Assembly: GCF_947568905.1 (NCBI RefSeq)
Contig: NC_079169.1
Location: 62,248,001 to 62,312,000 of the forward strand
DNA: 64,000 nt
Direction: 5' to 3'
Source of the DNA: Ostrea edulis
Taxonomy: Eukaryota
The translations under genes and the position numbers were made by a program. The notes under the pieces are model-generated. The model had not been told where the DNA came from, made no database searches, and saw nothing but the letters and a program-made list of their open reading frames with translations. Shown piece by piece: positions 37,681 to 40,600 of this stretch; position 1 is the stretch's first letter; each line of letters starts with the position of its first letter.

Positions 37681-40600
37681 ATGGCTCGGGATTGACAGTG
37701 AAAGGGTTACAAACAATCCGGATAATGTCTGTGTCAAAATTGTAAAAATGTGTTAACCGTGAAAATTAAATACTTTCACAGGGATACGTCTTCTTTATGT
37801 AAACAATCAACAATACAAAGCGGAGAATGAAACACTTACAAGATGCAGAAACTCCTTGTCAAACAATGACGTGTAATTGACAATGTCATTTGACGGAGGG
37901 GGTAAAAAATGCTTGACGACAGTGTGGTTCTTTGGGCGAGTTATAACGACCTGCTCTTGTCTGTAAATTGGCCTGAAAGACGAGAGTAACAAACGTACAA
38001 AGCATAACATCATAAACGCGGTTTTCCTTCTTCTTTTTTTAATCGTTAATGATGAAGCAATAAAAATACTGCTGATTTAGATTTTATAGTGTGATTCATC
38101 AATATGTACTGGAAATAAATGTGTACCTTATATGTCCTTTAAAACACGAACCACCTGGGCAGGGAAGTGGTTCGGGTAGCTTAGGGACGCCACAGTCTGT
38201 CTTGGAACACGTATCTAAACAGCGTGATGTTGTTTCGTTCATTGGATGATAAACCTCTTTTCCAATCGTTACATTCTTGTTCGATATGGTGAACGAAATA
38301 TCGAATGGTGTGTTACCATTTGACGTAGAACCAAGATAGTTTAGAAGACTTTCTGGTGTGCAATACTTGGCTGATCTGCCACAAACAACTGATAAAGCTT
38401 TATCGCCTGCACTAGGTAATTTGACATTTCTGCAAGAATTAAACATTCCGTAGGTAAAATCACGTGATATGACGTAATCCAAGGAGCGCACTGATCGACT
38501 GTCATTACTGGTGACTTTGAGAAACGTGCTTTGTGTTGGACTGCATGTCATTTGACAAAACATGTTCATAAAATTGTGTAGACAAGAAGGGCATCTAGAG
38601 AAAATCTGCTTGATGAGTCCTATATTTTTGTTCATGCTTTCCAGCTGGTTTGCATCACAACAGGTCTTTGTGTTACCACCTGAAACATGATGAGGATGAA
38701 TCTTGAAATTTTAAAAGAACATAATTTCGTGGAACCAAGCATGAATACATGCATGCAGTGCTAAATACCTTGCTAAATTATCAAAAACACCATCACTATA
38801 CAGTGTCATCGTAAGTACATGTTTTGCAGGAGCATTCATGCGAAAAGAGAACAAATGGCCCAGGACTGCAATCTGGCCTTATTTCATAATTTGGGGATGC
38901 AGTAAAACGTGTTTTTGAAGTCTTCAATCAGCCCTTGATCAACCGTTTTCTTAATCCACATGACTTTATGATGTTTTGCATGGTACATGCTCAAACCAAA
39001 TGTTTGAAAAGTCACAGTACAAAATCTTACTTAATTTATTACCATTGCTGTTGATAAGTTTTGCCCAAGCAGAAATCATTCTAGTAAACATTGTTATATA
39101 TGAAGGATATTGTCCAGTTTCACTGTAAACCCATTCGGCAAACTGCGGAAGATTCCGGTACCCTACATCTAGATGGAATCGATCGAGTGATCCGAGTGAC
39201 TGTAAACCGTATAATTTGACGTACTACTTTTTAGATTATGTATGTTATAAGAAACGTTTGTTTCTTTGTTTTACGTTCCTTCGAAAAAAAAAATTCATTC
39301 TGACATGTTGAGCTTACTCTTCCTAGGTACCTGATCCCACCGCTGGTATATCCAAGGGTCCGTGTTTGCGGCGGGTGTGACTGGTCGACAGGGGATGCTT
39401 ACCCCTTCTAGACACATGATCTCACTTCTGGTATATCCAGGGGTCCGTGTTTACCCAACTCTCTATTTTGCATTGCTTTTAGGAATTATGAAATTGATCA
39501 CTGTTCCTTATCTTTACCTTTCATTGAGATGTCATCAGCTGTAGATGAAGTACCACAAATATAGACCTATGTCTAATGCTCAGGCCTGTAGCAGTGAGAG
39601 TTCTTTAACGTACCAATGCCTGTCGCGACACGGGACCTCCGTTTTTAAGGTCGATATCCGAAAGATCCGTTGTTGTAGTAAAGACTTTCTCCTTGGAAAT
39701 ACGAATCCAGCATAGAATTCCCCTAAGAAGAATTAAACTGGTTCTAATTGCCGAGCGTTTGGCGGAGGAGCAATCACTATCTATTTTAACGTCTTAGGTT
39801 TGACGAGCGACACGAGCGGGGTTCGAACGCACGACCTCCCGGTTACGAAGCGAATATTCTACCACTGAGCTACCACGACCGGTTATTTAACAAATGTATG
39901 AAGACGTTCAACAATATCAATATTTCCATAACCCCGAATTTTATATGCATACATTAAAAACAGGTATGAAAGCATTGAAGAAAAAAATAGTCCAAAAATA
40001 AAAAAATTGAAACGAAGTTCATTCAATCATGAAATTAAGTCATACATTTTTTATTAGAATACGTCAACCGTAACAATAGTGAAACTGTCAGAATTCATTT
40101 TGCGAAATTTCGCGGTTTTCGCGGACGTTGCGCATTATATCGCAAAAATTACGCGTTTATTCGCAAACTTTATGCGTTACAATGTATAACACGGAATATT
40201 TTTTCAGCTACGAAAATGATCGAGCTCAATGGGCTTTCGTAAAAATATAAATGACTCTTACACCCCAAATCGTCGCCCATCCTAAATCGTCACCGGCGAC
40301 GATTTGGGGTTTCTTATGTAACACCCCAAATTGTCGCCCGTCCTAAATCGTCGCCGGCGACGAGTTGGGCATAACCTCACATCCCAAATTGTCGTCCCCC
40401 TTGCAACAACTATTTGGAAACATCATTTACATACAAACTGGCCCTGTTTGTTAACTCCTTCTCCTCTCCTCCTTTTTCATAAATTCTGCTGATCACGGGG
40501 TTATTATGTCTTGTGCATCGCAAACGTGTAAGTGACCTCAGATTATATTAGATAACGTCTGTTAGCTACCGTTTGGACACTCTCCCGCCGTTTGGACACT

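What the first reader, a model, noticed from the sequence alone, without database searches (positions are those of the whole stretch)
37840..38250. TM1-TM2 excised in frame from inside one exon, with a new CPGGSC junction linking NTD directly to MLD
Seen: NPC1 exon 3 is 1069 nt and the paralog's is 553 nt, with the same flanking phases (1 and 2). The 516-nt (172-codon) difference covers TM1, the cytosolic loop, TM2 and TDPVKLWS. The paralog reads ...PEPLPCPGGSCFKGHI-R-PIYRQEQ where NPC1 reads ...HFG-PFYRTEQ. The following intron is only 154 nt, too short to hide the missing helices. Removing both helices keeps both domains on the luminal side. Inference: the unusually large fused exon allowed a one-step topology change, and the two close Cys may form a new linker disulfide.
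Basis: partly seen in the sequence, partly recalled or inferred. Interest (0 to 1): 0.72.

Follow-up and report, generated by a model that had tools for sequence, protein, structure and literature searches.

The report
Oyster NPC1 copy without membrane helices
Next to its normal NPC1 cholesterol-transporter gene, this oyster-like mollusc has an intact second copy in which the first two membrane helices are missing from inside one exon, joining the sterol-binding domain directly to the NPC2-docking domain; oysters and scallops share this design, but the only RNA seen in this species stops before the joint.

Summary
Full-length NPC1 (gene A, + strand) has a 1069-nt exon 3 (6678-7746). The convergent paralog (gene B, - strand) has a 553-nt exon 3 (38679-38127) with the same phases, then a 154-nt intron and a 133-nt exon 4. 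Gene B reads ...PCPGGSCFKGHI-R-PIYRQEQ.

It is not an assembly deletion: contigs from seven other runs cover it without gaps. It is not species-specific either. Saccostrea echinata and S. cucullata have the same junction (exon 3 = 550 nt, CP[DG]GSC). A third, unidentified species has it too (577 nt, CPNGSC). Scallops have a short exon 3 (586 nt) with the same phases but no linker cysteines. Two scallop mRNA contigs carry the whole ORF uninterrupted.

Oyster and scallop copies form one well-supported clade. dN/dS is 0.16-0.27, and gene B has no transmembrane-like segment. AlphaFold2 gives two confident domains joined by a low-confidence linker.

Caveat: the only RNA contigs found for this species run unspliced through the exon 3 donor to a poly(A) tract inside intron 3. 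They carry GT>GA at the donor. So the NTD-MLD splice is not shown in this animal.

Verdict: real, ancient and conserved; a new, undescribed architectural variant of NPC1.

The parts
38127..38679 (-). Gene B exon 3 (553 nt): the N-terminal sterol-binding domain (NTD) plus a proline-rich linker. It lacks the 172 codons for TM1, the loop and TM2.
   Evidence: Direct reading. Pfam NPC1_N E=3.6e-47. Maps to human NPC1 residues 69-255. Gap-free in independent contigs.
38144..38161 (-). The CPGGSC codons (a C-x4-C motif) in the new linker.
   Evidence: Direct reading. Conserved as CP[GDN]GSC in S. echinata, S. cucullata and P0054.
37973..38126 (-). Intron 3 of gene B (154 nt): donor GT at 38126-25, acceptor AG at 37974-73.
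   Evidence: The orthologous introns are 213, 195 and 1421 nt long.
38022..38043 (-). Candidate poly(A) site inside intron 3: ATTAAA at 38043-38038, with RNA contigs ending at 38022 followed by 14 non-templated A.
   Evidence: runs X1, X2; loose end of 14 T before 38022 on the + strand; ATTAAA position.
37840..37972 (-). Gene B exon 4 (133 nt): start of the middle luminal domain (MLD). It is 73% identical to gene A exon 4, the best-conserved exon.
   Evidence: Exon 4 is 133 nt in every orthologue examined.
35466..35689 (-). Gene B exon 5 (224 nt), MLD.
   Evidence: Pfam NPC1_MLD E=4.6e-15.
33337..33431 (-). Gene B exon 6 (95 nt), MLD.
32933..33114 (-). Gene B exon 7, ending in TAA (32935-32933) just past the point where gene A splices on to its TM3 exon.
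   Evidence: Pfam NPC1_MLD. The Saccostrea proteins end at the same place.
42350..42500 (-). Gene B exon 2 (151 nt), start of the NTD.
   Evidence: Exon 2 is also 151 nt in S. cucullata.
48586..48648 (-). Candidate exon 1 of gene B (63 nt): MFGHLSISVAFLLIVGASPVK, a signal-peptide-like sequence, followed by donor GTTAGT.
Evidence: No RNA support.
6678..7746 (+). Gene A (full-length NPC1) exon 3, 1069 nt: NTD, TM1, loop and TM2 fused in one exon.
7244..7747 (+). The stretch of gene A exon 3 (CTILHI...FNSHFG) that has no counterpart in gene B; its last codon borrows one base from the next exon.

Best explanation
Gene B is a conserved, intact paralog derived from NPC1. It sits tail-to-tail with the full-length NPC1 gene. 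Its reading frame is a candidate signal peptide (21 aa), the sterol-binding N-terminal domain (NTD), a linker of about 20 residues rich in proline (carrying C-x4-C in oysters), the middle luminal domain (MLD) that docks NPC2 in human NPC1, and a stop: 466 aa in all, with no membrane helix. The roughly 172 codons for TM1, the cytosolic loop and TM2 are missing from inside exon 3. That exon keeps its original acceptor, donor and phases. The loss happened in a duplicate of NPC1 before oysters and scallops diverged, and the result has been kept under purifying selection. Shown here: the exon anatomy, the shared breakpoint in orthologues, the lack of TM segments, the selection, the fold of both domains, and spliced orthologous mRNA in a scallop. 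Inferred: the protein is secreted or luminal; it works as a free sterol-accepting module, with NPC2 docking on the MLD and sterol passing to the NTD on a flexible tether; and the two linker cysteines form a small disulfide loop.
For: Exon anatomy and junction. Domains. Independent DNA. Orthologues with the same junction: P0045 (S. echinata XP_061187964.1, 71% identity, E=1.6e-81), P0224 (S. cucullata, exact CPGGSC), and P0054/L012 (CPNGSC, 577-nt exon). Exon lengths 550/550/586 with conserved phases. Scallop mRNA contigs L009 and L010 carry an uninterrupted 532-aa ORF, while the gene spans 14.6 kb. Patella copies keep 'KDSRVREEKKHFVSHYGP', homologous to gene A's post-TM2 '[19 protein letters not shown]', so the 3' edge of the loss lies just after TM2. 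Oyster and scallop B-type proteins form a clade at 100/95*. dN/dS is 0.27 between the two Saccostrea species (MLD 0.20) and about 0.16 between the window and Saccostrea; there are 445 open codons at only 47% identity to A. No TM-like segment. The AlphaFold2 model has mean pLDDT 88; its MLD matches 8eus/5kwy (TM-score by target 0.90-0.92, rmsd about 2 A) and its NTD matches 3gkh (0.84). B lies next to a full-length NPC1 gene in all three oysters.
Against: No read or contig of this species shows the exon 3 to exon 4 joint. The only two RNA contigs (runs X1 and X2) run unspliced through the donor to a poly(A) tract at 38022, and they carry GT>GA at the donor. Polymorphisms among individuals are 3 non-synonymous (counting the two adjacent changes in codon 263 as one) to 2 synonymous, which is too few to show constraint within the species. 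Exon 1 and secretion are predicted only. The linker is at pLDDT below 50 and pTM is 0.54, so neither a disulfide nor a fixed domain arrangement is supported by the model. The function is entirely inferred from what the two domains do in human NPC1.
Confidence: 0.75

Rival explanations
1. In this species the main product is an NTD-only protein. Transcripts read through the exon 3 donor, add about 9 residues (a stop follows at TGA 38101-38099) and are polyadenylated inside intron 3. The NTD-MLD joint is then little used or not used at all, at least in carriers of the GA donor allele.
For:: the only RNA contigs (runs X1 and X2, two samples of one study) cover 38022-38265 and 38022-38231 unspliced. 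X1 ends in 14 non-templated A after 38022. ATTAAA lies 16-21 nt upstream. Both contigs carry 38125 A>T on the + strand, which turns the donor GT into GA.
Against: Both runs are tiny (about 3 million letters) and were found through exon 3 words, so they cannot show a distal 3' end. All seven DNA data sets have the GT donor. MLD exons are under stronger constraint than the NTD between species (omega 0.20 against 0.34), and exon 4 is 73% identical to gene A. Neither would be expected if the MLD were not translated.
Confidence: 0.15
2. The helices were lost by deletion or skipping of a whole exon in an intron-rich ancestor, and introns were lost later. On this reading there was no deletion inside a fused exon.
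For: In Patella vulgata the NTD-to-post-TM2 junction lies exactly on an intron (...AVTK | MDFTAKDSRV...), followed by a 65-nt mini-exon. Another organism's NPC1 (L001) has an intron between the NTD linker and TM1.
Against: Gene A and all four bivalve B-type genes examined have no intron in this region. Many related species encode NTD, TM1 and TM2 in one ORF. The bivalve B clade sits beside the oyster full-length gene rather than with the gastropod copies. The exon-loss path would need the same introns to be lost in parallel from both A and B.
Confidence: 0.1
3. Gene B is a decaying partial duplicate, that is, a pseudogene.
For: It lacks everything from TM3 onward. A donor-site variant segregates. 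The within-species polymorphism ratio is uninformative.
Against: It has 445 open codons at 47% identity to its parent, intact splice sites, dN/dS of 0.16-0.27, orthologues with the same architecture in at least six bivalve species, and expressed mRNA in a scallop.
Confidence: 0.04
4. An assembly artefact removed 516 nt.
For: None found.
Against: Gap-free agreement of contigs from seven other runs, and the same short exon in other species.
Confidence: 0.01

Closest known systems
NPC1 / NPC1L1 (human structures 3JD8, 6W5R, 6V3F)
   Same: The NTD and MLD are homologous by sequence and by predicted fold. Intron positions and phases of exons 2-7 match those of the neighbouring full-length gene.
   Different: There is no TM1 or TM2, no sterol-sensing domain, no C-terminal luminal domain and no TM3-13. 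The product is 466 aa rather than about 1300. It cannot be a membrane transporter.
Automatically annotated 'NPC intracellular cholesterol transporter 1-like' proteins of Saccostrea echinata (XP_061187964.1) and S. cucullata
   Same: Same architecture, same junction motif PCP[GD]GSCF.G.IR-PIYRQEQ, same exon pattern, same C-terminal end, and the same position beside a full-length NPC1 gene.
   Different: 65-67% protein identity over the whole protein (71% over exon 3). Exon 3 is 550 nt against 553 nt. No paper describing them was found.
Scallop B-type proteins (Argopecten irradians XP_069106602.1, Pecten maximus, Mizuhopecten yessoensis)
   Same: A short exon 3 (586 nt) with the same phases, NTD joined directly to MLD, and the same clade.
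   Different: The linker is ...LPNISVLYPW-P[DE]YR, without the cysteine pair. In Argopecten two extra exons encode a C-terminal hydrophobic tail that looks like a GPI or membrane anchor; Pecten and Mizuhopecten proteins have similar tails.
Isolated NPC1 NTD (3GKH) and MLD-NPC2 complex (5KWY), as studied in vitro
   Same: Both domains fold and function as soluble fragments in the laboratory. Gene B is a natural fusion of those two fragments.
   Different: Here they are joined by a short natural tether and kept by selection. Ligand and partner are untested.

Membership tests
NPC1/NPC1L1 transporters (Patched-like RND superfamily) | N-terminal sterol-binding domain (Pfam NPC1_N) | tested here: met
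   E=3.6e-47 for exon 3 and 2.1e-07 for exon 2. Fold match to 3gkh with TM-score by target 0.84, on the orthologue's model.
NPC1/NPC1L1 transporters (Patched-like RND superfamily) | Middle luminal domain (Pfam NPC1_MLD) | tested here: met
   Exons 4, 5 and 7 hit PF22314. Fold match to 8eus/5kwy with TM-score by target 0.90-0.92.
NPC1/NPC1L1 transporters (Patched-like RND superfamily) | TM1 and TM2 between the NTD and the MLD | tested here: not met
   No hydrophobic segment, a 172-codon gap relative to gene A, and no remnant in the window.
NPC1/NPC1L1 transporters (Patched-like RND superfamily) | Sterol-sensing domain, C-terminal luminal domain and TM3-13 | tested here: not met
   The frame ends at TAA 32935-33 right after the MLD. 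The self-comparison finds no gene-A-like exons below 32.9 kb on the minus strand.
Bivalve TM-less NTD-MLD paralogs (unnamed; Saccostrea, scallops) | NTD joined to MLD within a short exon 3 (550-586 nt, phases 1 and 2), followed by a 133-nt exon 4 | tested here: met
   553 nt and 133 nt here; 550, 550, 577 and 586 nt in the relatives.
Bivalve TM-less NTD-MLD paralogs (unnamed; Saccostrea, scallops) | Groups with these proteins in a tree rather than with full-length NPC1 | tested here: met
   (window B, S. echinata B) at 100/100*; with Argopecten B at 100/95*.
Bivalve TM-less NTD-MLD paralogs (unnamed; Saccostrea, scallops) | Expressed as a spliced mRNA that joins exon 3 to exon 4 | tested here: inconclusive
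   Met for the scallop orthologue (L009, L010). For this species only unspliced, polyadenylated RNA contigs were seen.
Bivalve TM-less NTD-MLD paralogs (unnamed; Saccostrea, scallops) | N-terminal signal peptide | tested here: inconclusive
   Candidate exon 1 at 48648-48586 has a hydrophobic core and a good donor. The S. cucullata protein has one. There is no RNA support here.
Processed or unprocessed pseudogene | Frame disruptions or neutral evolution (dN/dS near 1) | tested here: not met
   No stop in 445 codons; dN/dS 0.16-0.27.

The most novel reading that the evidence does not exclude
Molluscs have repeatedly and independently cut TM1-TM2 out of NPC1 duplicates, once in pteriomorph bivalves and at least once more in gastropods. 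Each time the result is a free or GPI-tethered 'NPC2-docking plus sterol-acceptor' module that works away from the lysosomal membrane, for example in extracellular or digestive handling of dietary sterols. In the oyster lineage a conserved C-x4-C disulfide staple in the new linker sets how far the two domains can move apart.
Probability: 0.25. Interest if true: 0.7.

Novelty: new variant of a known kind. Interest (0 to 1): 0.55.

Why it matters
In the current model of NPC1, NPC2 docks on the MLD and hands cholesterol to the NTD, which then feeds the membrane domain. Here evolution has kept exactly those two domains, joined by a short tether, and discarded the whole membrane machine. The design has been under purifying selection since before oysters and scallops split. 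That suggests the hand-off module has a use of its own, and it offers a natural, soluble, expressible minimal NPC1 for biochemical and structural work. It is also a clean example of a topology-preserving deletion: removing two helices leaves both domains on the same side of the membrane. Molluscs depend heavily on dietary sterols (my own background knowledge, not tested here), so a secreted or surface-anchored sterol acceptor is a testable candidate for sterol uptake.

Tried and rejected
1. Nucleotide alignment of the end of gene B exon 3 and of intron 3 against gene A exon 3, to locate the breakpoints. Scores were no better than shuffled sequence, so the 5' edge of the loss cannot be placed exactly.
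2. P0044/L001 looked at first like another helix-less exon. It is an ordinary NPC1 of an unrelated organism, with an intron after the NTD linker and TM1-TM2 on the next exon.
3. The word search with gene B exon 3 found only itself, because the length window excluded full-length relatives. The exhaustive representative search was needed.
4. A scaffold alignment of the separate exon translations (A1) was misaligned and was not used.
I asked for the part beside it instead, so exons 6-7 and the distal 3' end could not be examined.
6. Domain orientation against the cryo-EM structures. The model aligns to 3JD8 over both domains only at rmsd 13.8 A, with pTM 0.54, so the predicted orientation carries no information.
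7. The hypothesis that all TM-less mollusc proteins form one clade is marginally rejected (AU p=0.039). I treat single versus multiple origin as open.
8. Three literature searches found no description of such proteins.
9. No contig was taken for human, and the N gap at 27420-27619 was left alone.

Full report
ANATOMY. The window comes from a mollusc: the RNA runs are labelled 'mollusc metagenome' and the nearest proteins are from Saccostrea. It holds two NPC1-type genes that converge on each other. Gene A lies on the + strand from about 5 to 26 kb and is a full NPC1. Gene B lies on the - strand. Read by hand, gene B has these exons: candidate exon 1 at 48648-48586 (63 nt), exon 2 at 42500-42350 (151), exon 3 at 38679-38127 (553), exon 4 at 37972-37840 (133), exon 5 at 35689-35466 (224), exon 6 at 33431-33337 (95), and exon 7 at 33114-32936 followed by TAA. 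Exons 2-7 give 445 open codons. The corresponding gene A exons are 148, 1069, 133, 233, 101 and 161 nt, with the same phases.

CHECK OF THE OBSERVATION. Every number in the finding holds: 1069 against 553 nt, phases 1 and 2, a 154-nt intron, and the reading ...PCPGGSCFKGHI-R-PIYRQEQ against ...FNSHF-G-PFYRTEQ. Gene A exon 3 aligns to human NPC1 residues 69-399, including TM1 and TM2. Gene B exon 3 aligns to 69-255. Pfam calls NPC1_N on exons 2-3 and NPC1_MLD on exons 4, 5 and 7. A hydropathy scan shows two TM-like segments in A and none in B. A relaxed tblastn search with the missing 168 residues finds nothing else in the window.

NOT AN ARTEFACT. Five Logan contigs from five other runs match 39179-37654 at 99.9-100% with no gaps, and all have the GT donor. 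Two further runs have even depth over introns and exons, so they are genomic DNA, and their SNPs show they come from other individuals. They bridge 37687-38750 with no indel.

RELATIVES. The exhaustive protein search with exon 3 gave P0045 as top hit: 439 aa, 71% identical over the whole exon including its end. This is Saccostrea echinata XP_061187964.1, annotated 'NPC1-like', and it reads ...PRPCPDGSCFDGRIR-PIYRQEQ... S. cucullata P0224 (472 aa, with a signal peptide) has the exact CPGGSC. P0054/L012, from an unidentified species, is only 45-48% identical to the oyster proteins. It still has ...PRPCPNGSCFDGKIR, then the same split codon and donor, in a 577-nt exon. Fifteen of 17 junction residues match S. 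echinata, so the junction is among the best-conserved stretches.

Scallop proteins (Argopecten, Pecten, Mizuhopecten) also pass from NTD to MLD without helices. Their linker is ...LPNISVLYPW-P[DE]YR and has no cysteines, and they add a C-terminal hydrophobic tail. Exact spliced mapping gives exon 3 lengths of 550, 550 and 586 nt, and exon 4 is 133 nt in all. Two scallop contigs of 2.1-2.2 kb carry the whole 532-aa ORF uninterrupted, whereas the gene spans 14.6 kb. The orthologous junction therefore exists as spliced mRNA.

Gastropods (Littorina, Patella, Haliotis) also have helix-less NTD-MLD proteins. The Patella ones keep KDSRVREEKKHFVSHYGP, clearly homologous to gene A's [19 protein letters not shown]. 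This places the 3' edge of the loss just after TM2 and supports the view that the original exon end was kept.

HISTORY. A maximum-likelihood tree of the NTD+MLD regions puts all the mollusc sequences in one starred clade. Inside it, (window B, S. echinata B) plus Argopecten B are supported at 100/95* and sit beside window A at 94/91. Littorina B groups with an unidentified full-length protein at 100/98*. Forcing all helix-less proteins into one clade costs 28 log-likelihood units (AU p=0.039). So the loss seen here predates the oyster-scallop split, and the gastropod forms may be independent.

Intron maps differ between the groups. In Patella the junction falls on an intron, followed by a 65-nt mini-exon. 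In Littorina it lies inside a 164-nt exon. In bivalves both A and B lack introns in this region. This favours an intra-exonic deletion in the bivalve lineage but does not prove a single step.

SELECTION. dN/dS is 0.27 between the two Saccostrea orthologues: NTD 0.34, the 30-codon linker 0.37, MLD 0.20. It is about 0.16 between the window and Saccostrea, where dS is near saturation. Exon 4 is 73% identical between A and B, against 35-48% for the other exons. Cysteine counts are 22 in the oyster proteins and 20 in the scallop ectodomain, matching the presence or absence of the linker pair.

STRUCTURE. AlphaFold2 on the S. cucullata orthologue with a 40-row alignment gives mean pLDDT 88. Both domains are confident, the linker (residues 235-254) is below 50, and pTM is 0.54. 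Foldseek matches the MLD to 8eus/5kwy (TM-score by target 0.90-0.92, rmsd about 2 A) and the NTD to 3gkh (0.84). The two domains together fit full-length NPC1 only at rmsd 13.8 A. The model therefore says 'two rigid domains on a flexible tether'. It says nothing reliable about orientation or the disulfide.

RNA IN THIS SPECIES. Only two small RNA runs held exon 3 words. Each gives one contig, 38022-38265 and 38022-38231. Both cross the donor unspliced and end inside intron 3. One carries 14 non-templated A after 38022, with ATTAAA at 38043-38038. Both carry 38125 A>T on the + strand, which changes the donor GT to GA on the gene's strand. None of the DNA data sets has this variant.

This shows transcription on the gene B strand. 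It also shows an NTD-only read-through form, at least from that allele. The between-species constraint on the MLD exons argues that the joined form is the selected product. For this animal, though, that remains an inference.

VERDICT. The core of the interpretation, an in-frame and topology-preserving loss of TM1-TM2 inside a fused exon, is well supported by orthologues. The event is ancient rather than a novelty of this genome. The cysteine pair is conserved in the oyster lineage and is plausibly a disulfide, but this is untested. No paper on such proteins was found; they exist only as automatic 'NPC1-like' annotations.

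Noticed in passing
window 38125 (donor of gene B intron 3): Both RNA contigs (runs X1, X2) carry A>T on the + strand, which turns the donor GT into GA. Seven DNA data sets have GT. It could be a segregating splice-site allele that forces read-through to the intronic poly(A) site.
   Followed up: partly
window 36985-37460 (intron 4 of gene B): Summed contig depth in the two genomic runs reaches 10^4 to 4.5x10^5 here, against about 13 and 90 in the flanks. This is a very high-copy repeat, and it produces many spurious joints.
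   Followed up: no
window 37650-37682: A run of more than 30 G on the minus strand in intron 4. The independent contigs L002-L005 all break or diverge there.
   Followed up: no
window 40546-41135 and 41552-42156 (intron 2 of gene B): Six-frame ORFs are 100% identical at an offset of 1006 nt. This is either a perfect tandem duplication or an assembly duplication.
   Followed up: no
window 42834-44381 and 46505-47609 (intron 1 of gene B): Two tandem arrays. The first has a 27/40/67/107-nt unit family (consensus unit 'CTGTAACAGTGAACAGAGATACTGAGT...'). The second has a 163/316-nt unit. The first gives long spurious ORFs in all frames.
   Followed up: partly
L007:168-1091 (Saccostrea echinata): A second, partial B-like copy lies just upstream of the B orthologue. 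Its exon 5 and exon 6-7 equivalents are 74% and 53% identical to P0045.
   Followed up: no
L011:1603-4966 (Saccostrea cucullata): A different full-length NPC1 paralog lies head-to-head with the B orthologue. It is only about 41% identical to window gene A, and the equivalents of exons 3 and 4 form one 1.3-kb ORF. Oysters appear to carry an NPC1 gene cluster.
   Followed up: no
P0190, P0226, P0227 (scallops); L008:23848-24640: Scallop B-type proteins end in a Ser/Thr-rich stretch and a hydrophobic tail of about 20 residues, which looks like a GPI-anchor signal or tail anchor. In Argopecten two extra exons encode it; oysters lack them.
   Followed up: partly
P0048 / P0192 (Strongylocentrotus purpuratus LOC115920225) and P0047: Other NPC1-derived proteins without helices: tandem repeats of the NTD alone in a sea urchin (cluster member of 1220 aa), and an NTD-MLD-spacer-NTD transcript ORF of unknown origin.
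   Followed up: no
   Followed up: no
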